The notes under the pieces: model-generated
The model's input: the letters and a program-made list of their open reading frames with translations, nothing else
What the model was told of the DNA's origin: nothing
The model's database searches: none
IMG/VR virus record: IMGVR_UViG_3300030503_000315
Location: 62,001 to 126,000 of that record
Strand: one strand, 5' to 3'
DNA: 64,000 bases
Program-made: the position numbers and the translations under genes
Part shown: piece by piece, positions 46,723 to 60,575 of the stretch
Position numbering within the stretch: the stretch's first letter is position 1
Layout: the number at the start of each line of letters is the position of its first letter

Positions 46723-47181
46723 TTACGCGAGATCGAGCATGAAGCTCTTGTCCTTCTTCGCGCCAGCCTTCTTGACTACTTTTTTCGCCGCAACCTTCTT
46801 GACCACCTTCTTCATGGTCGGCTTGGTGCCCGTCTTCTTCGCTACCTTCTTGGCTGCGACCTTGACCTTGACCTTGACCTTCTTCGCAGTCTTCGCCGGT
46901 GCTTCTTCATCGTCTTCCACTTCTTCAACCTTCGAAGCGCGGGTCGACTTGCGTGCTACCTTCTTCGCGGCACCACGCGTCGTCTTCTTTGCAGCCGGAC
47001 CACGACCCCCGACCTTCTTCTTGGCCTTCGCTGCCTTGATTGCCTCGCGCAGTTTGGCGATGGTCAGTTCTTTCTTTTCCAATGTCTTCTCGAGACGCAC
47101 GTTGGTGCGCAGGATCTTGCCGAATTGACCGGCGGCTTGACGAAGGACAGCGGAAGGGTTAGATGCTTTTTGCGTTGCCAT
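46723..47181 (-). CDS. Histone H1-like K/A-rich DNA-binding protein
   Basis: Repeated KKVA(A/V)KK units with a central EEVEDDEE acidic island. Confidence 0.82.
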   Translation of the reverse strand: MATQKASNPSAVLRQAAGQFGKILRTNVRLEKTLEKKELTIAKLREAIKAAKAKKKVGGRGPAAKKTTRGAAKKVARKSTRASKVEEVEDDEEAPAKTAKKVKVKVKVAAKKVAKKTGTKPTMKKVVKKVAAKKVVKKAGAKKDKSFMLDLA

Positions 47182-49578: not shown

Positions 49579-50444
49579 TTAGCTCGCAGATTTGTCAATC
49601 AACCAAACATCGTACGCGTTGGTGAGTGGATCGAATCTGATTCTAAGAAGACCAAAAGTTTTCACAGGCCATTCCCAGACTGCGTAGTGACCCTTCCACT
49701 TCACCTTTGTTGGAACTTTTTCCCGCAAGTTGATGATTGTGGGCCTGCAATGTTTTGCAGTGAACTGAACTTTGCCACCGGCATTTGTCCAATGCCCTCC
49801 GACTTTGAGTCCGAGCTCATCTAACAGTTTTCGCGCCTTTTCAATGTCTGCTTTCATGCTCTCTCCGTTCCGTTGGAAGTTGTCCTAAATCAGAATGCGT
49901 CGTTCACGCCGTTGTAACGCGGAGTGCGAGTCTTGCGCGCCACAGTCTTCTTTGCTACCGGCTTCAGTGTCTTCTTAACCGCTACAGTTTTCGTCACAGC
50001 TTTCTTTGCGGGTGCAGGCTTGCCCCCGATTTTGCCACCAGCCTTCAGTGCGGTAACAACGAGGTCCATCGTGAACTTCATACGACGGCCGCTTTCGTCT
50101 GTAGCAACGAACGGGAATTTCGGGCGGCTGGGGTATAGACCGATCAGTGTGAATGTTTCCCCACGATACTCAAACGTGTCGTTCAAGCACGAAGCAGGAA
50201 CGCCAAACGAGTCAGAGTATCTTTTGAAATCCGCAGCCTCGGCAGATTCGACCGATCCGTCAGGGTTCACAACTGAAACGTTGATTTTCAGATCAACGCT
50301 CGTTGCTGTTTTCATTGTTCCACCGGCTGGTCGAAAAGCCACGCCATATTTGCGCCCGAGCGCTTCGAGCTCAGCGATCATTGCGTCGGAAAGGACGCGG
50401 CAGGCTGTACGGTCGAGGGTCTTGATTGCTGTTGTCTTTGCCAT
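49579..50444 (-). other. Two hypothetical CDS (49579..49857; 49890..50444 with a K/A-rich tail)
   Basis: ORFs preceded by AACG(A/G)AACGGAG leaders. Confidence 0.68.
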
Positions 50445-50620: not shown

Positions 50621-50923
50621 CTATCTCTGCTCCAGGCGCTTACTCAATCGAATGTATACCGTCGCGTACAAACCAGTAGGATCGCAGCCGGACGCGCGGT
50701 TCGCAAGCGCAACATTGTCGATGCCGTTCGCAACGAACACCCCATAGTAGTACGCGACCTTCAACACCTTTCGATATCCATCCACGAGAACGTACTCACC
50801 AACGCGTGGGATTGCCAGAGCGTCCTGGATTGTGATCGTTGCTATACCACCGAGCTTATCGCTCATCGGAATTTCGTAGTCTATCTGCATGTCACACCAC
50901 GGTGAGTTCCTGATTATCTTCAC
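50621..50923 (-). CDS. Hypothetical protein
   Basis: Coupled to the topoisomerase A-subunit stop. Confidence 0.5.
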   Translation of the reverse strand: MKIIRNSPWCDMQIDYEIPMSDKLGGIATITIQDALAIPRVGEYVLVDGYRKVLKVAYYYGVFVANGIDNVALANRASGCDPTGLYATVYIRLSKRLEQR

Positions 50924-52412
50924 GATCCTGATACGTCTGATCCTTCAGGACGAGATCGCGAACGCGCAGCACGTCGAGTAGCACCTTCTCTCTTGGTTTC
51001 TTCACCCACGCCTGCAGCTGCTTCAGCAACGTTTGCTGCTCCTTCAGTTTCGCCTTGTACTCGTTCTGGTTCAGCTTCGAGATTTTGCGCAGCTGCAGGT
51101 CACAGACCAACTTCGCCTGTTCTATAGTGATCTTCAGCGCTTTCACCAATGCTGCCTCAGGGTCCTCAGACTTCCGAATCGTCTTGATGATAAGATCAAT
51201 GTGATCCGCGGCGTAGATCATGAGCTCAGAGTACGCTATGTCACGTTCGGTATACGAGATGCGATACGCCAAGCTGCGCAACTCAAGCTTCATCCTCTCC
51301 CGAAGCCACGCAATAATCAACTGCGGAACTGACAGAGCTTCGATCTTCGTATCGAAACTGACAACGCCATCCTCGATGCTGGAAGTCCGTCTCGTCACAT
51401 TAATCTTGAACGGGCGACGTTTGACTGTTGCCTTCTGCACCTTTGCCACAAACTTATCAAACTGATCGAAGTTATACGCGGGCTTGCACACTACAGTGAA
51501 GGTAGTCGAACCTTCGGAGTTCAAGCATGTCAAACACTCGGGCATTTTCCGCACAGCTTCGGTGAACTTCTCAAGATCAGTTCCTGGTGGCCAATCGTTG
51601 ATGACGATACGTTTGCTGTCCCGATCGACCTGAAGATCAGACTCGAACTGTACACTTGCATAAGGTGAGGTGAACAACTGATTCCACTGTGCCTTGTTCT
51701 CTTTCGATTGAACAAGTTGCCCGCCCCAACGATGGCTGAACTTCAGCGTCTTGGCAAAATCCAGCGGCTGCAGTTTCTCACCCTTCAGCAATCTTTCAAT
51801 TACACTCACGACCGACACTGCAGTGAATGTTGGGATCATCGTGTTGATACCCACGCCGATGCCTTCGCCACCATTTAGAATGATGTTGGGTAGCTGTGCT
51901 GGCAGGGTGACTGGCTCGACCCACTTGTCATTGTAGTTGGGAACGAACGACGTTACTTCTTTCGCAATGTAATCCGGCTCCAGAAATGACAAGCCGTAAT
52001 CCGTCAGCTTGCACTCTGTGTATCGATACGCAGCGGCGCCGTCAACCATCGATCCCCAATTGCCACGACCGAAGATAGATGGAGTCGGCATGTTGACCAT
52101 CGTTACCATTGCGCCGTAGATAGAACCATCGCCGTGTGGGTGAAGTTTACCGAGAACGAATCCGACATGCTCACCAGCTTTCTGAATCGACTTCCCACCA
52201 TTCGCCGACATGCCCCAAAGAATGCGCCGATGCACCGGCTTCAAACCATCGAACAGATCCGGAACCGACCGATCCAGATTGGTCGTCACTGCGTATGTTG
52301 TCATGTTGCGTTCGCCAAATGAACGCAACGTTTCATTCTTCAAATGCTTATCTTCTTCCGGCACTAGACTACGTTGCTTGGTCGAGGCACGCTTCTTAGT
52401 TACCATGGTCAC
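50892..52412 (-). CDS. Type IIA topoisomerase subunit A (GyrA/ParC/T4 gp52-like, no beta-pinwheel CTD)
   Basis: DGLKPVHRRILW, HPHGD.SIY, AAAYRYTE (catalytic Tyr), P..LPN...NG..GI.VG. Confidence 0.93.
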   Translation of the reverse strand: MTMVTKKRASTKQRSLVPEEDKHLKNETLRSFGERNMTTYAVTTNLDRSVPDLFDGLKPVHRRILWGMSANGGKSIQKAGEHVGFVLGKLHPHGDGSIYGAMVTMVNMPTPSIFGRGNWGSMVDGAAAYRYTECKLTDYGLSFLEPDYIAKEVTSFVPNYNDKWVEPVTLPAQLPNIILNGGEGIGVGINTMIPTFTAVSVVSVIERLLKGEKLQPLDFAKTLKFSHRWGGQLVQSKENKAQWNQLFTSPYASVQFESDLQVDRDSKRIVINDWPPGTDLEKFTEAVRKMPECLTCLNSEGSTTFTVVCKPAYNFDQFDKFVAKVQKATVKRRPFKINVTRRTSSIEDGVVSFDTKIEALSVPQLIIAWLRERMKLELRSLAYRISYTERDIAYSELMIYAADHIDLIIKTIRKSEDPEAALVKALKITIEQAKLVCDLQLRKISKLNQNEYKAKLKEQQTLLKQLQAWVKKPREKVLLDVLRVRDLVLKDQTYQDREDNQELTVV

Positions 52413-55072
52413 GCCGCCTTCTTAAGTTTGGGTTTGACTCCACGCTTCTCTGCTGCCAGGTCCCGAATTGCGTCAGATATAGGACCGAGTCGCGCAACGC
52501 CTTTCCGTGGTACAGATTTCTTTACTGTTTTCTTCGCTGCGACTTTACGTGGTGGCTTTTCCTGTTCCTCATCGTCCTCTGAAACATCCGAGGCTGAAGG
52601 CAACCCAAAGATCTTCCGGCGATACGCAACGTCTTCGTCCATAAGTTTGACGAACTCGACTTTGTCTTCCTTCTCGATTGCTGAGATTCGAATTAGGCGA
52701 CGCGTCTGCGGGTCGCACGCAAGAATGCGCAGCAGATTCTTCGGAGCTTCCCCCCACCCCTTCAGGTGATTGATCTGAACCGAGGCCGGCGCCTTCAGCT
52801 TCGCCAACTTCTTCTTCATGATCGATACAGTGTCCGCTGTCACCAGTTGCGCTTTGTAGATCGAGTAGAACTCGGGGATCGCCGACACATACACCATCCC
52901 TCTAGCAAACAATTCAGGCAAGTACTTGTAGAACAACGTCAGGAGCAGTGAATTGATGTGGCAGTTGCTTGACACAATACCAGAGGGTAACATGAAGTTA
53001 TGATACCTAGGTACTGTCAAACAGTACACCGGTACGGGTTCGTTCAGATGTTGAACACGCAACTTGCTAACTGCGAAGAATCCTTTGCCCGTCATTCGAT
53101 CAATCAGATCCTTTGCTTTCCCAGTTGCTTCATTTTGAGGCGCATACACCCGATCACCAATTCGCATATCTTCTGCACGAATGTATGCCAGATTTTGGCT
53201 GTACACCTGATAGATACGATCACGCACTGCCGGGGTTCGCACGACCAGGAATTTGTGATTCAAATCGACTTTGTACTTGTGTCCACCAATCTCCATCGAT
53301 ACGAGCGTATCGACATTCTTCTGCAATGAAGCACTTGCAGGTTTCCACTGTAACTCTCCACCAGCCCACACAGGCACGGCGAAGGTTACGCCGGCCTCCG
53401 CAAGGTGCTGAATTGATCGCTGCTGTGATTTGGTGCCATCCAATCCTCCCATCGCAGGAGGTCTGAAGGAAATCAATGTTTCTCCAACGAACGGTCCATC
53501 CGGATCTGGGTCAGCCAGACAAATGATCTTTCCCATAGTCAGCTTCGAGTACGGGTCGGCCGCCTTCGGATCATACCCGATTGCTGCCAGGATGTTAATC
53601 ACTTCCTCAGAATCAAGAGGTGTCTTTTTCTTCGTCGGCTTCAGAGCATTCATGATCTTGCCACGCAACGGCAAGATAGCCTGATACGCGAACCGCGCTT
53701 CCTTTAGCTTGCCCGTCGCAGAATCACCTTCTGTGAGGAAGAGTTCGCGATCATGCACCTTCGTCTTCGGATCGAACCCTGCATATTTTGCAGGCAGACC
53801 CATGCGCTTGACCTTGTTCAGATCAGCAGCGTTCTTCTTCGACATGTTGAACTGATTGCGCGCCTCATTGACTTTCGTCGCCTTGTCGCACAACCTTTGT
53901 GCCATTGCCTTGTTCTCTTTGAAGAACTTTGTTGCTTCGACAATGAGCTTGTCTTCCAGACCTTTGCCCATACGTTCATCCGACAGGAACACCTTGTCCT
54001 GAGAATTGAACTTTGCCTTGTGCAACTTGGCATTGACGACGCCAACCAGACCTTCTTTCAAATCGACTTCGCGGAATACAGGGACGAGTTTGCCGTCGAC
54101 CTTACGTGTCTTGATGTACGGCTTCAATGCCTGATACAGAGCGCCCGTTACTGAGTCAACGTGCTTACCACCCTTGCTATTGAAAGAACCATTAGTGAAC
54201 CCACGAAGGTCGCAGTCGCCATAGTCAGAAAAAGCAACCACGACATCAGCCGCGTGAGGATCCCCATGAACAGACTTGTACTCGAAGATCGTCTTCTCCG
54301 CCTGTGCCTTGAGCTTTGCAAGACGCGCATCAATGTACTCCTTAACTCCAGCCTTGGATAGATACTTCTTTTCGCTTTTAGCTGACTTGATGCGTATCGT
54401 CACACCCGGGTTGAAGTACGCCATCATCTCTGCCCATTCCAGCGCCATTTGCGTCGGAAACTTCGAGCTAGAGAAAATCGACATGTCGGGTTTGCAATGA
54501 ATCAGCGTCCCGGACTTCACCACGCCTTCAGGTCCGCGCGGCGCCTTGCACTTCGACACCGGGGTAACAAGCACACCCTTCTTGAACCCTATGGTGTACC
54601 ACTGACCTTCGAAAAAGGTGTAGACCGTGAAGTACTCACTTGTCGCGTTGGTGCCCTTGCTGCCGATGCCATGCGTCCCGATCGACACTTCATATGCTGC
54701 GGTGTCGTACTTGCCAGACGTATTCAGTGCTCCGAATACAGCTTGCATGGTCGACATCTTATTAATGATATCTTTGCCGTTTACGTGAATCTTTGTCTTC
54801 GTAACCCCCTGTGGTACACCATGCCCCGCATCGCTTACCCAGAACGATCCGTCCTTGTCCAGGTATAGACCGACCATATCATTCCGGCCGGCCAGCGCTT
54901 CATCCAAACCGTTGTCGAGAAGTTCTTTGATAATCATCCACAGGCCGTAGCTATCGGTGCCGCCAATGTACTGGCTAGCATTGCGACGCACCGACTCAGG
55001 GAAGACCAGACTCTTGATATTAGCTGAAGTGTACTTCGCGACTTTCTTAGCTGCTACTTTTTTGATTACCAT
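52409..55072 (-). CDS. Type IIA topoisomerase subunit B (GyrB/ParE-like) containing an intein
   Basis: GHKL motifs ELLDNGLDE, DAGHGVP, GTHGIG; Toprim TEGDSA, PLRGKIMN, DPDPDG; KGWGE. Confidence 0.93.
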   Translation of the reverse strand: MVIKKVAAKKVAKYTSANIKSLVFPESVRRNASQYIGGTDSYGLWMIIKELLDNGLDEALAGRNDMVGLYLDKDGSFWVSDAGHGVPQGVTKTKIHVNGKDIINKMSTMQAVFGALNTSGKYDTAAYEVSIGTHGIGSKGTNATSEYFTVYTFFEGQWYTIGFKKGVLVTPVSKCKAPRGPEGVVKSGTLIHCKPDMSIFSSSKFPTQMALEWAEMMAYFNPGVTIRIKSAKSEKKYLSKAGVKEYIDARLAKLKAQAEKTIFEYKSVHGDPHAADVVVAFSDYGDCDLRGFTNGSFNSKGGKHVDSVTGALYQALKPYIKTRKVDGKLVPVFREVDLKEGLVGVVNAKLHKAKFNSQDKVFLSDERMGKGLEDKLIVEATKFFKENKAMAQRLCDKATKVNEARNQFNMSKKNAADLNKVKRMGLPAKYAGFDPKTKVHDRELFLTEGDSATGKLKEARFAYQAILPLRGKIMNALKPTKKKTPLDSEEVINILAAIGYDPKAADPYSKLTMGKIICLADPDPDGPFVGETLISFRPPAMGGLDGTKSQQRSIQHLAEAGVTFAVPVWAGGELQWKPASASLQKNVDTLVSMEIGGHKYKVDLNHKFLVVRTPAVRDRIYQVYSQNLAYIRAEDMRIGDRVYAPQNEATGKAKDLIDRMTGKGFFAVSKLRVQHLNEPVPVYCLTVPRYHNFMLPSGIVSSNCHINSLLLTLFYKYLPELFARGMVYVSAIPEFYSIYKAQLVTADTVSIMKKKLAKLKAPASVQINHLKGWGEAPKNLLRILACDPQTRRLIRISAIEKEDKVEFVKLMDEDVAYRRKIFGLPSASDVSEDDEEQEKPPRKVAAKKTVKKSVPRKGVARLGPISDAIRDLAAEKRGVKPKLKKAA
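52964..53494 (-). mobile_element. 177-aa mini-intein (Hint domain, no homing endonuclease), class-3-like
   Basis: Begins PFVGETL, block B DLNHKF, block F VYCLTV, ends GIVSSN followed by +1 Cys; removal restores DPDPDG-CHINSLL. Confidence 0.88.
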
Positions 55073-55075
55073 GGC

Positions 55076-56337
55076 TCACTCGGCAGAGTTTTCCTCATTA
55101 TACGGATCGAGATTGGGTACATTCATCAATGCATGTACAAACGGAAGGACATTCGAAAGCTCGGTGATATTGCACTTGGCAGAATGATACGGAGACCACG
55201 AACCTCCTTTGGACAACTCAAGGAGGAAGTGTACGTATCCAGGTTCTATGTACTTGGGTGGGCGCTCCATGCCGGGAGCTGACTTGCCATACACTACTTT
55301 ACCTTTCGGATTATCGAATGTCAACGAGATCCGAATACGCCCCAGCTTCCACTGCACCTTAGGCAACACCTGTTCGTCAGCTTCGAGATTTATGATAGGC
55401 ATCTTGTTGCTATCGAACTTGAAGTCGACGTGAAACTTAATCCGCTTACCCGACGCAGATTCCGAGTACTGTGGAGTGTACGCGAATCCCCAACGAGAGA
55501 AGAAGTTGTGCAGGAGCTGCTCCAGCTTCGGCATAGCTTCCTTCGCGGCCTTGATCTTTTCGGGATCTGTAGCTAGGAATGTCATCTCAGAATTAGAGAT
55601 CAGACACTTGCCATACTTCTTCTTCCACGTCGCGGCTAACATCTCCACAAACGGGTCCATCAATTCTTCCTCGAAAGGAACTTCCTTCCCTACAATACCA
55701 TGAGACTTTGTGATTAGTCTCAAGGTAGGGATAAACGTGTGATGGATTCGTAGAAGTGGAACTCCCAGCTTCTTCAACGTCTTGTACGTCTCGAAGTCAA
55801 CCGGGAAGTACCACTGCTTGATACGCGTCAAACGAATCTCATTGGGATCGAGATTCGACTTGACTTCCTCAGGCTCTGGTGGTGGGGCCGGGATCACTTC
55901 TACCACTTCCTTGCCATCTTCAACTTTCAACTCTGCTTGATTTACTACAGGCAACTTCAACCTCTTCTTGATTGAAGTCTTTGATGCGGGTTTCGTTTCC
56001 GCTTTTGCCTTCATTGGTCGACACCTCTGTCTTTGGATTCAAGGTAGTAGTAAAAGCGCTCGATGAACGCCGGGCTTTGCTTATTAACAAGTTGTAGCAC
56101 ATTCGCTTCAGCTACAGGGTTTCTGGAATTTCTGGCTGCCATCACCTGCTTGGCATATTTCCTTGCGCGGCCGACAACAATGATCTGAACTTCGCCCGCC
56201 GGGCAATCCTCGTTCCCTTTCGAGAAATGACATTTCGCATACTTCTTGGGTTCATCGGGGTCCAGGTGGCCGCACTTTTTGCACAGCGGGCTGTAAACCT
56301 CGAGATAGTCCTTGTTATCCACTTTACCACCTCTCAC
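55076..56337 (-). other. Two hypothetical CDS (55076..56014; 56011..~56320 with Cys/His motifs)
   Basis: Tiled ORFs upstream of the topoisomerase genes. Confidence 0.65.
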
Positions 56338-56355
56338 ATCTCGAAAATGACAGGA

Positions 56356-56387
56356 AGGCTGACGCCCTCATTAGAGAACGTCAGCCT
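56356..56387 (-). terminator. Probable terminator
   Basis: AGGCTGACG/CGTCAGCCT stem extended by G-U pairs, TAAT loop, 30 nt after the poly-Glu gene. Confidence 0.55.
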
Positions 56388-56417
56388 GGCTGATTACTAC
56401 TTTTTCACTTCAGGTGA

Positions 56418-57185
56418 TCAGAAGTTGTCGAGGTCTTCCTCTTCTTCTTCCTCTTCTTCCTCTTCTTCCTCTTCTTCCTCTTCTTCCTCTTCTTCCTCTT
56501 CTTCCTCTTCTTCCTCTTCTTCCTCTTCTTCCTCTTCTTCCTCTTCTTCCTCTTCTTCTTCCTCTTCTTCTTCCTCTTCTTCCTCTTCTTCCTCTTCTTC
56601 CTCTTCTTCCTCTTCTTCTTCCTCTTCTTCCTCTTCCTCTTCTTCCTCTTCTTCGTCAGCCACCGGTGCTGCTGCGACGCCGCCCGAGGTCACGAAGATG
56701 TACGAAGGATCCGAGGCGATGACATTACCCGACTCTTCGGTCACGTACACCGTCTGGTTGTTGCGCTCTTCGATGCCGGTGATGGTACCCAGAAGTTCAA
56801 GAGTTTCATAAACAATGACGTTACCGACCACAGCCTTGACACGAGTCCGTGGGATAATCACGTCGCCCACGCCATAGTACGTTGTAGCTGTCGGCTTCTT
56901 AGCCGCCTCAACACGGGATTGAACCTTGAGGAAAACCTGCTGACCAACAGTCGAGGCAACAGCTGCAGCAACCTTCGTCTTCTTCACGACCTTTTCCGGT
57001 GCAGCCTTCTTTGCTACAGTCTTCTTAGCAGCAACCTTTTTAGCTACGACCTTCTTCGCAGCAACCTTCTTGGCAGGAACTTTCTTTGCTACAGTCTTCT
57101 TAGCAGCAACCTTCTTCACTGCAGCCTTCGCTTTCGTGCCGGCCACCGTCTTTGCTGCTTTCTTTGCTTTCGTACCAATTGCCAT
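56418..57185 (-). CDS. H1-like basic N-terminus, small globular core and a 73-residue poly-Glu tail
   Basis: KKVAAKK repeats in about aa 1-75; aa 178-250 are all Glu. Confidence 0.82.
   Translation of the reverse strand: MAIGTKAKKAAKTVAGTKAKAAVKKVAAKKTVAKKVPAKKVAAKKVVAKKVAAKKTVAKKAAPEKVVKKTKVAAAVASTVGQQVFLKVQSRVEAAKKPTATTYYGVGDVIIPRTRVKAVVGNVIVYETLELLGTITGIEERNNQTVYVTEESGNVIASDPSYIFVTSGGVAAAPVADEEEEEEEEEEEEEEEEEEEEEEEEEEEEEEEEEEEEEEEEEEEEEEEEEEEEEEEEEEEEEEEEEEEEEEEEEDLDNF
56436..56654. repeat. GAA/GAG trinucleotide tract (mostly 9-bp GAAGAGGAA units on the minus strand), 219 nt
   Basis: Read directly from the sequence. Confidence 0.97.
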
Positions 57186-57265
57186 GGTGATATACTCTCT
57201 AGAGATTTGATAAGAACCGATCCGCGTTGCCCGGTGCGGTCGAACCCGGTTTGCTTCTTCCTACA

Positions 57266-57274
57266 TATTTACTA
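57266..57274 (-). promoter_or_regulatory. Class B motif TAGTAAATA
   Basis: About 80 nt upstream of the poly-Glu gene, followed by hairpins. Confidence 0.6.
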
Positions 57275-57822: not shown

Positions 57823-58608
57823 TCACTCGTCCGAGTCTTCAGCCTTCTTGTTTGCACCACGCGTGCGCTTCGGCGGAAGCAGAACATCCTTGAACGCTGC
57901 CGACATGAATCTCCGTGCTTTGACGAATGCCTTGTAGACCGGATCCACTTTGTCGAGCGCCTTCAACTTCTTGACCGAGTTGACGACAACAACCTGAGAC
58001 ACCGCCTTGGTCCCTACTGTGATCGAATTGTCTGCAGCCTTCTTACCGATGCGGAACAGGATGCGAAACGTCGTGTTCGGGGTGAGACGAAACGCTGCGC
58101 CGAATGCTGCCTTCTCTTTTGCTTCACCTTCCTTGTTCTTGAACTTGACCTTGGCACAACGCTCCTTGATCGATGCCGGGTAGAACTTGAGGGCGTTCGT
58201 CTTGAACGTCACCTGAGCCAGACGAGCCTGCAGACCAACCAGCGTCTTTGTGTCATAAGCCGAGATGTCGAACTTCTTCTTATCCTCTGCCTGTGGGTCA
58301 TAGCGACCGACGTAGCGAATGGCTCGAATCTGATTCCCCAGCAGGCCATCCTTTTCGGTACGTACCGTAACTTCGAGGAAGAAGGGCTTGAAGTCTGAAG
58401 GTGCATCGAACAGGAATGTTCCCGGCTTAGCCTTCGCTTTCGTCTTCTTCGCGGCTCCGCCCTTGGCACGTGCCAGTCGCGCTTTCTCCAGCGGAGTCAA
58501 CACTTTGCCTTTCGGTGCGACCTTCTTGCTGCTCGAAGTCACCGACTTCCCACTGGCTGTTTTCTTCGCCACTGTTTTCTTTGTTGCTACTTTCTTGGCT
58601 GTTGCCAT
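57823..58608 (-). CDS. Highly basic protein with an H1-like N-terminus
   Basis: MATAKKVATKKTVAKK...; K/R-rich globular remainder. Confidence 0.75.
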   Translation of the reverse strand: MATAKKVATKKTVAKKTASGKSVTSSSKKVAPKGKVLTPLEKARLARAKGGAAKKTKAKAKPGTFLFDAPSDFKPFFLEVTVRTEKDGLLGNQIRAIRYVGRYDPQAEDKKKFDISAYDTKTLVGLQARLAQVTFKTNALKFYPASIKERCAKVKFKNKEGEAKEKAAFGAAFRLTPNTTFRILFRIGKKAADNSITVGTKAVSQVVVVNSVKKLKALDKVDPVYKAFVKARRFMSAAFKDVLLPPKRTRGANKKAEDSDE

Positions 58609-59311
58609 GATGTTGCTCCGTTAGGTGTGATATGGTTAAATGATTCAATTCCGACTGCAAGATGAAAATTAGGGTTTGCGCGTGCTTCTCAGCATACGCA
58701 CGAATGACTTCAGCCGGTTTTCCTTGCTGATGCAGCATTGCGATCTGAAACGTTGGATCATTCCTCAGGCGCTGAAGCGAAACTTGCGGTCGCTGCAACT
58801 CTTGCTTCAAGTACTCGCGACCTTGGTGACATCGCCAAGCCCACTTGCCTGCACCTGTGTTTTTTACTAACATCAGATATGTTTCCTGAAGGAAAGTCAA
58901 ATCCCCCAGACGATACGCTGCTACGACCAACTGGAACAACTCTGAATCACCTCCACGATCCGGGTGAACGAGTGGGGCAACCATCCGATATGCATTTTTT
59001 ACTAGATGCGCCTGAGCATTGTACAGTTGCTCTGTTCCTGCAGTTATATAACCTGCGGAAGTGATCGCGTCCTGTGCAATCGTTGCAGGCGTACCCCGTG
59101 TAGCCAATCGGATTTCTCTACGCAACCGAATGATTGTTTTAGCCTCAGGCATCTCGTCCAGGTACGACGACACAAGCTTCATCGAAGAATTGTAGAGCTT
59201 GTAGTATTGCTGCCTTGCAGCATCGACCTTGCGCGCCAACAAATCGTACTCGTACAGGTGCGCGAGATTGACTGTCAAATTAATCGGTATAAGGTTAGGC
59301 ACTGTACACAC
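58427..59311 (-). CDS. J-domain (DnaJ-like) co-chaperone
   Basis: VKNAYRMVAPLVHPDRGGDSELFQLVVAAY contains the HPD motif. Confidence 0.78.
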   Translation of the reverse strand: MCTVPNLIPINLTVNLAHLYEYDLLARKVDAARQQYYKLYNSSMKLVSSYLDEMPEAKTIIRLRREIRLATRGTPATIAQDAITSAGYITAGTEQLYNAQAHLVKNAYRMVAPLVHPDRGGDSELFQLVVAAYRLGDLTFLQETYLMLVKNTGAGKWAWRCHQGREYLKQELQRPQVSLQRLRNDPTFQIAMLHQQGKPAEVIRAYAEKHAQTLIFILQSELNHLTISHLTEQHHGNSQESSNKENSGEENSQWEVGDFEQQEGRTERQSVDSAGESATGTCQGRSREEDESEG

Positions 59312-59658: not shown

Positions 59659-60575
59659 CTAACGAGCTTTGTAATCTTTCGGATCAAACTCTAATCCGTG
59701 GTCCTCTGCCACAAAAGCGAACTCCTTCAGAAGAACTTGACGAACTTGCCGTTTGGTGGAGCCGATGTATTCGTAGTCGTATAGATCATCATGAACAGTT
59801 TGTAGCTCACACAATAAACTGATATGCTTCTCAAGCAATTTTTTGTACGATTTGTGTTTCGGAGCGGTGATGAATTTACCTAGCTCGTCAACTGCTTTAG
59901 CTTCCATAAGAGGAACATAAATCTCATCTGGAATAATACACCCAACGGCACACATGAGTCCTTTGGAACCCCTATAAGCACAGGTTTCAGTGCCATCTTC
60001 CGCCACTCCCATAGACGCCTTACCTTGCTTGTACAGGAAATGAGTGATGTAGTCGAATAGCTGCTGAGCAGTGATGCTCGGATCAATCATCTTCGGAAGA
60101 TCGCGTTTCATACTTGACCTCTCTTTACTGTATAGTCTTGCGAATCGAACTCCAGACCTTCCTGTGTGGCGAGAATCTGAAATCTCACCAACAATCCTCG
60201 ACGGACTTCATCCCTAGTCAGACTTTCATCGTCGAATGAATCATGGATGCCCTGCAATTCATTCAGAAGATACTCGTGTTCATCTACTAGACGCCAGTAT
60301 TTCTTTTCGCCTTTCCTATTGCGATACGTGCTGAGGATACCTTCCACGTCTCTGCCTTCCATATCCTTGCGATAGAAACGGTCGGGCAGGAAACATCCCA
60401 TGGCACACATTAGGCCACCATCACCTCGATACAGACAGGTCTTGTCGTCCTGATCATCTCCAGGCATAACTCCTATAGACGCCATACCTTGCTGGTACAG
60501 AAAGTGGGTGATGTAATCGAAAATTTGTTGGTCGGTCATTGATGCCGTAATCATTGTCGGCAATTCGCGTTTCAT
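59659..60575 (-). other. Tandem paralogous pair (59659..60111, 60108..60575)
   Basis: MKR(D/E)LP.MI..S.T.QQ.FDYITHFLY.QG...C.YRG..GLMCA.GC. Confidence 0.85.

What the first reader, a model, noticed from the sequence alone, without database searches (positions are those of the whole stretch)
56418..57185. Extreme diblock polyampholyte: H1-like basic arm plus 73 uninterrupted glutamates
Seen: about 75 aa of K/A/V repeats, a beta-rich core of about 90 aa, then Glu178-Glu250 encoded only by GAA/GAG with an irregular 9/12-bp phase, which argues against a simple collapsed repeat. It has its own class B promoter and terminator. Known: poly-acidic tracts act as histone chaperones or DNA mimics (nucleoplasmin, prothymosin-alpha with H1, Ocr). 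Inference: a self-regulating nucleoid protein or chaperone for the phage's many H1-like proteins, or a DNA mimic against host DNA-binding defences.
Basis: partly seen in the sequence, partly recalled or inferred. Interest (0 to 1): 0.7.

Follow-up and report, generated by a model that had tools for sequence, protein, structure and literature searches.

The report
Jumbo-phage protein with 73-glutamate tail
A real gene of a 215-kb peat jumbo phage encodes a lysine-rich arm, a small beta-barrel and 73 glutamates in a row; it is the extreme member of an unnamed protein family that always sits beside the phage topoisomerase genes, and it probably uses its DNA-like acidic tail to manage lysine-rich DNA-binding proteins.

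Summary
ORF 56418-57185 (minus strand, 255 aa) has a +25 Lys/Ala/Val arm, a neutral all-beta core and Glu178-Glu250 uninterrupted.

It is not an orphan. An exhaustive search found 14 relatives, and tblastn found it in phiRSL1, BcepSauron/Saruman, BCSR5 and Motura. All share the plan: a variable basic segment, a conserved roughly 95-aa small beta-barrel, and a roughly 30-150-aa D/E tail usually ending in a hydrophobic or aromatic tip.

The gene always lies in one conserved block 2-3 genes upstream of the phage type IIA topoisomerase. A GTAGTAAATA promoter-like motif precedes it. In this genome that motif precedes SSB, helicases and a sigma factor, but not the structural genes.

No Pfam, PHROG or PDB family covers the core.

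A 68%-identical relative has a 102-aa, 78-Glu tail built from a different repeat unit. The long poly-E tail is therefore a selected trait, although its exact length could not be checked with reads.

The function is inferred, not shown. The most likely role is a DNA-tethered electrostatic chaperone or competitor for the Lys/Ala tags on the phage's SSB, UvsX, topoisomerase and H1-like protein, or for host nucleoid proteins. This would resemble the acidic tails of HMGB1 and gp32.

The parts
57266..57274 (-). Promoter-like motif TAGTAAATA (GATAGTAAATA), 89 nt upstream of the ATG. It belongs to the non-structural gene class.
   Evidence: The window has 4 copies against 0.14 expected, all on the minus strand. 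The genome has 17 copies, all co-oriented with transcription. They lie upstream of SSB, an SNF2 helicase, a sigma factor, an exonuclease, PrkA and the H1-like gene. The motif is absent from the structural block. It is conserved upstream of the family gene in L009, L003, L005, Sauron and BCSR5, with variants in phiRSL1 and Motura.
57218..57242 (-). 5'UTR hairpin: a 7-bp stem with an invariant 10-nt loop ACCG(G/T)GCAAC.
   Evidence: It is conserved in the window, L009 and phiRSL1. Three stem pairs are compensated on both sides. With only three sequences this is suggestive, not proven.
57195..57205 (-). Palindrome TCTCTAGAGAG just upstream of the start codon; probably the ribosome-binding region.
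   Evidence: It is conserved in the window, L009 and phiRSL1.
56418..57185 (-). Coding sequence, 255 aa, of the arm / beta-barrel / acidic-tail family.
56976..57185 (-). N-terminal Lys/Ala/Val arm, aa 1-70, net charge about +25, with KKVAAKK-type repeats.
   Evidence: The Pfam HC2 match is below the curated cut-off (28.2 bits against 40).
56679..56975 (-). Conserved neutral core, aa 71-169: a short helix followed by a small all-beta barrel. Invariant residues include P112, G121 and G133.
   Evidence: The AF2 model with a 13-sequence alignment has pLDDT 83.9. Fold matches are only weak: Sm/Hfq, RimM PRC, Tudor and FlgD, Z <= 4.9.
56436..56654 (-). Poly-glutamate tract, Glu178-Glu250 (73 E), made of (GAAGAAGAG)n with 6- and 12-nt variants.
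56421..56435 (-). C-terminal tip DLDNF. Family consensus is acidic residues followed by [L/M/F]-F.
56354..56369 (-). Weak terminator-like hairpin downstream of the stop codon.
   Evidence: 6 pairs; not clearly above chance.
57823..58608 (-). Conserved upstream neighbour, 261 aa, with its own basic N-terminal arm. Function unknown.
   Evidence: Orthologues occupy the same position in all five relatives compared.
58427..59311 (-). Conserved J-domain-like protein (HPD motif) in the same block.
   Evidence: The Pfam DnaJ match is weak. Orthologues are present in all relatives.
56011..56337 (-). Conserved downstream neighbour, 108 aa, Cys/His-rich (C19, C22, C36/H37, C45).
55076..56014 (-). Conserved downstream neighbour, 312 aa, function unknown.
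52409..55072 (-). Type IIA topoisomerase large subunit (GyrB-like plus Toprim) with an intein and KKVAAKK tags at both ends.
50892..52412 (-). Type IIA topoisomerase A-type subunit.
46723..47181 (-). H1-like Lys/Ala-rich protein (152 aa) behind the same promoter-like motif. It is a candidate client or partner.

Best explanation
SHOWN. The ORF is a genuine gene of a roughly 215-kb phiRSL1/Sarumanvirus/Moturavirus-type jumbo phage from peat. It is the most extreme member of a conserved, so far unannotated protein family.

The family plan has four parts:
- a basic Lys/Ala segment, usually an N-terminal arm and in some members interspersed in the tail;
- a neutral small beta-barrel of about 95 aa;
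- a long disordered D/E tail of roughly 30-150 aa;
- usually a hydrophobic or aromatic C-terminal tip.

The gene always lies in the same block: J-domain protein, 261-aa basic protein, this gene, a Cys-rich 108-aa protein, a 312-aa protein, then the topoisomerase II subunits. It is preceded by the GTAGTAAATA-type motif that marks non-structural (replication, recombination, transcription) genes.

INFERRED MECHANISM. The Lys/Ala arm is the same kind of tag this phage attaches to its SSB, UvsX recombinase, topoisomerase II and H1-like protein. It tethers the protein to DNA. The 76-charge poly-Glu tail acts as a flexible DNA-like polyanion. It binds lysine-rich tags or tails of phage DNA enzymes, the phage H1-like protein, or host H1-like nucleoid proteins, and so controls their loading on and release from DNA. 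It can also fold back on its own arm, which would auto-inhibit the protein. The terminal DLDNF tip docks on a specific partner.

Functionally this would resemble the acidic tails of HMGB1, T4 gp32 and T7 gp2.5, and the prothymosin-alpha/H1 pair. What is selected is the charge and length of the tail, not its sequence.
For: Gene and tract. A second assembly is identical. The arm and core are identical in four peat runs.

Family:
- 14 relatives in an exhaustive phmmer search of 1.84 billion representatives, with shared architecture.
- Cultured-phage members: phiRSL1 ORF328/329, BcepSauron gp172 and Saruman, BCSR5 QRE00115 and Motura QDH83471.

Tail under selection for charge:
- L009 (68% identical) has 78 E in 102 aa, built from (GAAGAG)n instead of (GAAGAAGAG)n, with the same EDLDNF end.
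- Other members use D/E, D/S or alternating acidic and PAPKKGKK blocks.

Context:
- Conserved gene block.
- Promoter class.
- KKVAAKK tags restricted to six ORFs. Four are SSB, UvsX, topoisomerase II and the H1-like protein. The topoisomerases of phiRSL1, Sauron and L003 also carry Lys/Ala tails.

Core: a confident all-beta model with net charge about 0. Any DNA affinity must therefore come from the arm.
Against: - No experiment or expression data exist. No RNA run was listed.
- The fold search gives no functional analogue (Z <= 4.9).
- Synteny within one phage lineage may reflect common descent rather than a functional link.
- Some members (P0009, possibly truncated) show no basic segment.
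- Motura has the family, but its topoisomerase lacks a Lys/Ala tail.
- Net charge is strongly negative (-52), so stable DNA binding by the arm is not guaranteed.
- The homodimer prediction gave no answer.
Confidence: 0.4

Rival explanations
1. Anti-defence or host-takeover DNA mimic. [quoted passage not shown]
For: The tail is an extreme DNA-like charge array. The gene belongs to the non-structural promoter class. Phage DNA mimics that target nucleoid proteins are documented (PMC8892312 and PMC7617805, found).
Against: From general knowledge, known DNA mimics are compact folded proteins with fixed charge geometry and no DNA-binding arm. Here the tail is disordered and is paired with a Lys/Ala arm. 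The gene is embedded in a deeply conserved replication/topology block rather than a variable early or accessory region. PADLOC and anti-defence libraries were not searched.
Confidence: 0.2
2. Accessory or regulatory subunit of the phage type IIA topoisomerase. The tail or its tip would dock on the enzyme, whose C-terminus carries a Lys/Ala tail, and modulate DNA capture. The GyrA acidic tail and DNA-mimic gyrase regulators work in this way.
For: The position 2-3 genes upstream of topoisomerase II is invariant across relatives with only 37-50% core identity. Topoisomerase C-termini in the window, phiRSL1, Sauron and L003 carry Lys/Ala tails next to an acidic patch. The C-terminal tip is conserved. 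The role of the GyrA acidic tail is documented (PMC6463007).
Against: Gene order may simply be inherited. Pseudomonas putida phages (Aura group) keep the Cys-rich protein and topoisomerase but have an unrelated 143-aa protein at this position. Motura keeps the family, but its topoisomerase has no Lys/Ala tail.
Confidence: 0.15
3. A second SSB-like or mediator protein built on the gp32/gp2.5 plan: a basic N-terminus for cooperativity, a beta-barrel that binds single-stranded DNA, and an acidic tail with an aromatic tip that recruits replisome partners.
For: The order of parts is the same as in T4 gp32, and the acidic tail with a terminal Phe matches T7 gp2.5 and E. coli SSB (general knowledge). 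The gene has the same promoter class as the phage SSB.
Against: The core is electrically neutral, and fold searches find Sm/Tudor/PRC-like barrels, not OB folds, and only weakly. There is no match to Pfam SSB in the genome. The gp32 search was uninformative because its controls did not ring. The phage already encodes a recognised SSB (phrog_15004, E 2.5e-58).
Confidence: 0.1
4. Virion-internal or scaffold protein that is packaged with, or expelled by, the DNA.
For: From general knowledge, highly charged internal proteins and acidic scaffold fragments exist in T4-like heads.
Against: The gene lies far from the structural block (major head protein, sheath and fibres at genome 30-44 kb). It carries the motif that the structural block lacks. 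No virion proteomics were available.
Confidence: 0.05
5. Assembly artefact or non-coding repeat: the tract is a mis-assembled microsatellite and the ORF is spurious.
For: The longest perfectly periodic run is 116 bp, near read and k-mer length. The tract could not be checked with reads. The exact protein is not in the protein collection.
Against: Two assemblies agree. Every homologue has an acidic tail in the same frame and position. The tail length (86 aa) is within the family range.
Confidence: 0.02

Closest known systems
phiRSL1 ORF328/ORF329, BcepSauron gp172 (QBQ74552) and the Saruman orthologue, BCSR5 QRE00115, Motura QDH83471. All are annotated 'hypothetical protein'.
   Same: They are true homologues, with 37-51% core identity. 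They share the arm, barrel and acidic-tail plan, the position upstream of the Cys-rich protein and topoisomerase II, and a GTAAATA-type upstream motif.
   Different: Their tails are mixed D/E, D/S or alternating acidic and basic blocks, 28-147 aa long. None has a homopolymeric run close to 73 E. Only the metagenomic relative L009 comes near, with about 31 E in a row.
T4 gp32, T7 gp2.5 and bacterial SSB (acidic C-terminal tails)
   Same: The order is a basic N-terminus, a beta core and an acidic tail. The terminal hydrophobic or aromatic residue could act as a docking tip. The gene sits in a replication-gene context with the same promoter class as the phage's SSB.
   Different: The core is not recognisably an OB fold and is neutral. 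The tail is 3-10 times longer. The phage has a separate SSB.
HMGB1 (HMG boxes plus a 30-residue D/E tail), and prothymosin-alpha or nucleoplasmin with histone H1
   Same: A basic DNA-binding part is joined to an uninterrupted acidic tail that can auto-inhibit and can compete for lysine-rich linker-histone-like tails. This is a resemblance in how it works only.
   Different: There is no HMG box and no nucleoplasmin fold. The protein is of bacteriophage origin. The resemblance rests on charge architecture, not homology.
Phage DNA-mimic proteins (T7 Ocr, T4 Arn, SPO1 Gp46, T7 gp5.9)
   Same: It is a polyanionic surface made by a phage outside the structural gene class, and could compete with DNA for DNA-binding proteins.
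   Different: The known mimics are folded, with fixed charge spacing and no DNA-binding arm. Here the polyanion is a disordered homopolymer joined to a Lys/Ala arm.
Chlamydial Hc2 and bacterial H1-like Lys/Ala-repeat proteins (Pfam PF07382)
   Same: The arm has the same K/A/V repeat composition.
   Different: The match is below the curated cut-off (28.2 bits against 40) and covers only the low-complexity arm.

Membership tests
New family: jumbo-phage arm / beta-barrel / acidic-tail proteins (phiRSL1 ORF328-329 / BcepSauron gp172 type) | Conserved core of about 95 aa with the I-I-P-R ... A-V-V-G ... G ... Y-x-T signature | tested here: met
   phmmer E-values from 7e-19 to 8.5e-4 against 14 representatives. 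Invariant residues P112, G121 and G133. tblastn E-values from 5e-12 to 4e-11 against phiRSL1, Sauron and Saruman.
New family: jumbo-phage arm / beta-barrel / acidic-tail proteins (phiRSL1 ORF328-329 / BcepSauron gp172 type) | Long C-terminal D/E tail, usually ending in a hydrophobic or aromatic tip | tested here: met
   The tail is 86 aa with charge -76 and ends in DLDNF. The family range is 49-147 aa (about 28 aa in BCSR5), with ends ELF, DLF, EMF, DFF, LEF and FEF.
New family: jumbo-phage arm / beta-barrel / acidic-tail proteins (phiRSL1 ORF328-329 / BcepSauron gp172 type) | Position in the conserved block upstream of the Cys-rich protein and type IIA topoisomerase, behind a GTAAATA-type motif | tested here: met
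Histone H1-like nucleoprotein HC2 (PF07382) | Score above the Pfam gathering threshold (40 bits) | tested here: not met
   28.2 bits, E 2.5e-6, covering residues 16-99 only. The match is driven by composition.
Single-stranded DNA-binding proteins (bacterial SSB PF00436; T4 gp32 PF08804) | OB-fold core recognisable by profile or by fold | tested here: not met
   There is no PF00436 match in the genome, while controls rang in 11 of 14 genomes. The PF08804 search was uninformative because no control rang. Fold searches return Sm/Tudor/PRC-type barrels at Z <= 4.9 and no SSB. The phage's SSB is a different gene.
HMGB-type chromatin proteins | Helical HMG-box DNA-binding domain | tested here: not met
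   The core is all-beta and there is no Pfam HMG match.
Nucleoplasmin/nucleophosmin histone chaperones | Pentameric eight-stranded beta-sandwich core carrying acidic tracts | tested here: inconclusive
   No nucleoplasmin chain appears among the PDB fold matches. The oligomer prediction gave no answer. Weak fold searches cannot exclude a relationship.
Ocr/ArdA-type DNA mimics | Folded protein whose surface carboxylates reproduce the phosphate spacing of B-DNA | not testable with these tools
   The tail is predicted to be disordered, or an artefactual single helix. There is no sequence or fold match to known mimics.
Sm/Hfq, Tudor, PRC-barrel and other small beta-barrel folds | Structural match clearly above background | tested here: inconclusive
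   The best VIA Z is 4.9 (the tool's typical background best is 7-8). Foldseek against PDB gives E >= 0.15. AFDB and Atlas give TM < 0.5.

The most novel reading that the evidence does not exclude
The phage may use a 'charge code'. Lys/Ala tags on SSB, UvsX, topoisomerase II, the H1-like protein and the 261-aa neighbour, together with long polyanionic tails (this protein, and the 210-aa alternating acidic/basic tail of the SSB), would drive complex coacervation of a membrane-less replication factory on phage DNA. The poly-Glu protein would be its multivalent scaffold or fluidiser. That would be a condensate-based alternative to the protein-shell 'nucleus' of phiKZ-like jumbo phages.
Probability: 0.12. 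Interest if true: 0.85.

Novelty: new variant of a known kind. Interest (0 to 1): 0.6.

Why it matters
If the tail really acts as a tethered DNA-like polyanion, this family would be a viral counterpart of acidic-tailed chromatin regulators. Examples of those are HMGB1, prothymosin-alpha with histone H1, and the gp32 tail. It would operate in bacteria whose nucleoids use H1-like Lys/Ala proteins.

It would give a first function to a conserved 'hypothetical' gene beside the topoisomerase in cultivable jumbo phages of Ralstonia, Burkholderia and Achromobacter. These phages are being considered for biocontrol and therapy.

It would also offer a natural series of tails, from about 30 to 150 residues and from mixed D/E to pure poly-E, for studying how charge and length, rather than sequence, are selected in disordered proteins. 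The co-occurrence of Lys/Ala tags on several replisome proteins makes a charge-driven organisation of phage replication directly testable.

Tried and rejected
The flank-only run shows identical sequence in four runs but says nothing about tract length.
- No RNA run was listed, so expression is untested.
- The word-indexed protein search found nothing.
- The exact protein is not in the 15-billion-protein collection, so length variants could not be listed.
- The Pfam hits to HC2 and CDC45 are sub-threshold and driven by composition. They were rejected.
- No PHROG or Pfam family fits any core of the 13 members scanned.
- A PDB sequence profile search gave only a chance hit.
- Fold searches in PDB, AFDB clusters and the ESM Atlas gave only weak generic small-barrel matches.
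- Atlas feature searches for the core and for the 312-aa and 261-aa neighbours were below the noise level.
- The single-sequence AF2 model of the whole protein was poor, and its poly-E 'helix' should not be trusted.
- The search for related loci with the core alignment failed because no stretch was conserved enough.
- The homodimer job returned 'no answer' (0.70 against a control of 0.51). It is not used as evidence either way.
- The gp32 and gp23 Pfam searches were uninformative because their controls were silent.
- The Aura-group 143-aa protein at the syntenic position is not detectably homologous.
- A seven-sequence alignment of the 5'UTRs gave no consensus structure; the phiRSL1 row was taken from the wrong coordinates (corrected). 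Only the three closest relatives share the hairpin.
- Literature searches found no paper on this family.
Full report
**1. The observation**

The ORF at window 56418-57185 (minus strand) exists and translates to 255 aa. Its parts are:
- Residues 1-70: K/A/V repeats of the KKVAAKK type, net charge about +25.
- Residues 71-169: a beta-rich core with net charge about -1.
- Residues 170-177: a short Gly/Ala/Pro linker.
- Glu178-Glu250: 73 uninterrupted glutamates (50 GAA, 23 GAG).
- The C-terminal end: DLDNF.

Tandem Repeats Finder reports a 9-nt unit in 24.9 copies (score 365) at 56434-56654. The poly-Ser and Leu-Leu-Pro ORFs on the plus strand are mirror images of the repeat.

**2. Is the tract real?**

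Direct read evidence could not be obtained:
- Read laying refuses the repeat.
- All 24 listed runs are kept only as k=31 contigs.
- Those contigs stop about 36 nt inside the tract.
- The longest perfectly 9-periodic stretch is 116 bp. That is close to read and k-mer length, so the assembled length may be a lower bound.

Three lines of evidence argue against an artefact:
- A separate 56.6-kb assembly from another metagenome is identical over 12.3 kb, including the whole tract.
- The arm and core are letter-identical in contigs from four peat runs.
- Every homologue has an acidic tail in the same frame. The window's 86-aa tail lies within the family range of 49-147 aa.

The closest relative is L009, at 68% core identity. 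It has a 102-aa tail with 78 Glu, 11 Asp and 3 Ser, a run of about 31 Glu, and the same EDLDNF end. Its tract is built from (GAAGAG)n rather than (GAAGAAGAG)n. Two sister lineages have therefore expanded Glu codons independently with different repeat units. This points to slippage-driven evolution under selection for charge and length.

**3. What the genome is**

The window is bases 62001-126000 of a 215,315-bp IMG/VR virus record, estimated 91% complete. It occurs in at least 22 peat metagenome runs.

It encodes:
- Structural proteins: a major head protein, tail sheath and tail fibres.
- A T4-style replication and recombination set: DnaB, clamp loader, SbcC, UvsX, SSB, an SNF2 helicase and a two-subunit type IIA topoisomerase.

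Its relatives are the jumbo phages phiRSL1 (Ralstonia), BcepSauron/Saruman and BCSR5 (Burkholderia) and Motura (Achromobacter). These are Iyer et al.'s subgroup 2.2 (PMC7824862). A betaproteobacterial host is a reasonable inference but is not shown.

**4. A family, not an orphan**

An exhaustive phmmer search with the core (aa 70-177) against 1.84 billion representatives found 14 proteins, with E-values from 7e-19 to 8.5e-4. tblastn and BFVD fold searches added phiRSL1 ORF328/329, BcepSauron gp172 and its Saruman orthologue, BCSR5 QRE00115 and Motura QDH83471.

All members share these features:
- A start at MAI or MA.
- A basic segment.
- The conserved core, with IIPR...AVVG...G...Y.T and invariant P112, G121 and G133.
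- A D/E-rich tail.

The tail is universal, with charge from -27 to -89. The basic segment varies: an N-terminal arm of 0-82 aa, or PAPKKGKK-type blocks interspersed in the tail, as in Sauron, P0005 and P0008. Most members end in [L/M/F]-F or a similar tip (ELF, DLF, EMF, DFF, LEF, FEF, DNF).

No Pfam or PHROG model covers the core. No PDB sequence matches it.

**5. Fold**

With the 13-sequence alignment, AlphaFold2 gives a confident model (pLDDT 83.9): a short helix followed by an all-beta small barrel.

Structure searches return only weak, generic small-barrel matches:
- Sm/Hfq, RimM PRC barrel, Tudor, FlgD and PAZ, with VIA Z <= 4.9 and Foldseek PDB E >= 0.15.
- AFDB and Atlas hits with TM < 0.5.

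The only strong hits are the phage homologues in BFVD. The fold class is therefore 'small beta-barrel', and no functional assignment follows from it. The core is electrically neutral, so any DNA affinity must reside in the arm. A homodimer prediction gave 'no answer' and is not used.

**6. Context and regulation**

In the window and all five relatives compared, the gene sits in one collinear block. Motura and BCSR5 show the same core of the block. The order is:
1. A 104-aa protein.
2. A J-domain-like protein.
3. A 261-aa protein with its own basic arm.
4. This gene.
5. A Cys/His-rich 108-aa protein.
6. A 312-aa protein.
7. The topoisomerase II large subunit.
8. The topoisomerase II A subunit.

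The motif TAGTAAATA lies 89 nt upstream of the ATG. The statistics and distribution are:
- The window has 4 copies, all on the coding strand, against 0.14 expected.
- The genome has 17 copies, all co-oriented with local transcription.
- The genes downstream of these copies include the SSB, the SNF2 helicase, a sigma factor, an exonuclease, PrkA, DUF444 and the 46723 H1-like protein.
- The shorter core GTAAATA is absent from the structural block at 30-44 kb.
- The motif is conserved upstream of the family gene in L009, L003, L005 (tandem copies), Sauron and BCSR5, with variants in phiRSL1 and Motura.

It places the gene in the non-structural class. That is an inference, because no RNA data were available.

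Between the motif and the ATG, the window, L009 and phiRSL1 share a hairpin with three compensated stem pairs and an invariant loop ACCG(G/T)GCAAC. The downstream 'terminator' is weak.

**7. A shared charge grammar**

KKVAAKK-type tags occur in only six ORFs of the genome:
- the H1-like protein;
- the topoisomerase II large subunit, at both ends;
- this protein;
- its 261-aa neighbour;
- the SSB;
- the UvsX recombinase.

The SSB (phrog_15004, E 2.5e-58) also carries a tail of about 210 aa that alternates DEDEDE blocks with PPKRSKKKPAKKVAAKK blocks. The topoisomerases of phiRSL1, Sauron and L003 have Lys/Ala tails as well.

**8. Mechanism**

The best-supported reading has four elements:
- The arm is a DNA-affinity tag.
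- The tail is a tethered, flexible, DNA-like polyanion. It binds lysine-rich tags or tails of phage DNA enzymes, the H1-like protein, or host H1-like nucleoid proteins, and regulates their exchange on DNA.
- The tail can also fold back on its own arm, which would auto-inhibit the protein.
- The terminal tip docks on a specific partner.

This works like the tails of HMGB1, gp32 and gp2.5, and like prothymosin-alpha with H1. That comparison rests on general knowledge of those proteins, not on a test made here.

What is shown is the architecture, its conservation, the context, the motif and the tag distribution. All binding and regulatory steps are inferred. Confidence is about 0.4.

The rivals are:
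- an anti-defence DNA mimic (0.2);
- a topoisomerase accessory factor (0.15);
- a second SSB-like or mediator protein (0.1);
- a virion-internal protein (0.05);
- an artefact (0.02).

**9. Novelty and verdict**

The family is unannotated ('hypothetical protein' in every record), and no paper on it was found. Acidic-tailed nucleic-acid-associated proteins are a known design, so I rate this a new variant of a known kind: a new fold family with an exceptional homopolymeric extreme.

Interest is 0.6. The 73-Glu run, the conserved position beside the topoisomerase, and the Lys/Ala tagging of several replisome proteins would surprise a specialist. They are directly testable in cultured relatives.

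Noticed in passing
G000:C1:195764-197251 (outside the window; locus L020): The phage SSB (phrog_15004, E 2.5e-58) carries a C-terminal tail of about 210 aa that alternates DEDEDE-type blocks with PPKRSKKKPAKKVAAKK blocks. This is a second long polyampholyte on a replication protein, behind the same TAGTAAATA motif.
   Followed up: partly
window 46723-47181, 52409-55072, 57823-58608; G000:C1:197724-199223 (L021): KKVAAKK-type Lys/Ala tags occur on only six ORFs of the genome. Four are the H1-like protein, topoisomerase II large subunit (both termini), SSB and UvsX recombinase. The topoisomerases of phiRSL1, Sauron and L003 also have Lys/Ala C-tails.
   Followed up: partly
window 57266-57274 and 16 other genome sites: (A/G)TAGTAAATA is a strongly over-represented, strand-consistent intergenic motif upstream of non-structural genes. 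The structural block at genome 30-44 kb lacks even the shorter GTAAATA core of the motif. It resembles the T4 late promoter TATAAATA in sequence but not in the genes it precedes.
   Followed up: partly
window 57218-57242 (minus strand); L009:3727-3751 approx; L006:6680-6705 approx: The 5'UTR hairpin has a covarying 7-bp stem and an invariant 10-nt loop ACCG(G/T)GCAAC, followed by the palindrome TCTCTAGAGA at the ribosome-binding region. It could be a translational operator. Loop-like sequences also occur at genome 94222 and 139031.
   Followed up: partly
window 52409-55072: The topoisomerase II large subunit contains an intein (Pfam Intein_splicing, residues 585-702). In relative L005 the orthologue is split into two genes, and the second carries the HINT/intein part.
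   Followed up: no
L006:6652-7540 (phiRSL1 AB366653.2, ORF328/ORF329): The phiRSL1 homologue is annotated as two ORFs. The likely true start (ATGGCAATC = MAI) at L006:6732, the Lys/Ala arm and the core lie in three different frames. This implies two frameshifts in the record, from sequencing errors or a pseudogene.
   Followed up: partly
window 58427-59311: A J-domain-like protein (HPDRGG motif; the Pfam DnaJ match is weak) is conserved in the same block in all relatives. This suggests recruitment of host DnaK to something encoded nearby.
   Followed up: no
window 56011-56337: The 108-aa protein has invariant C19, C22, C36/H37 and C45, which looks like a zinc ribbon. It is the most conserved small gene of the block, and is also present in Pseudomonas putida phages of the Aura group that lack the acidic-tail family.
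   Followed up: partly
L024:3483-3914 (Pseudomonas phage vB_PpuM-Aura gp196): At the syntenic position, Aura-group phages have a 143-aa beta-rich protein with a basic C-terminal tail (KPEKKVKPKASTKKK) and no acidic tail. It is not detectably homologous (hhalign probability 0.1).
   Followed up: yes
window 59659-60111 and 60108-60575: Two adjacent paralogous genes (about 150 aa each) both match a single gene in L009 (phrog_17693, unknown function). This is a tandem duplication in this phage.
   Followed up: no
G000:C1:150851-154817 (L014, L015): PrkA-like AAA protein kinase and DUF444 (YeaH-like) genes lie behind the same motif. They are stress-response-type auxiliary genes carried by the phage.
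   Followed up: no
window 49890-50444: A HicB-like antitoxin-fold protein carries a Lys-rich C-terminal segment. HicB-like genes also flank the topoisomerase genes in L005.
   Followed up: no
window 56227-56811 and 56414-56722 (plus strand): The poly-Ser (194 aa) and Leu-Leu-Pro (102 aa) ORFs are reverse-strand shadows of the Glu repeat, not genes.
   Followed up: yes
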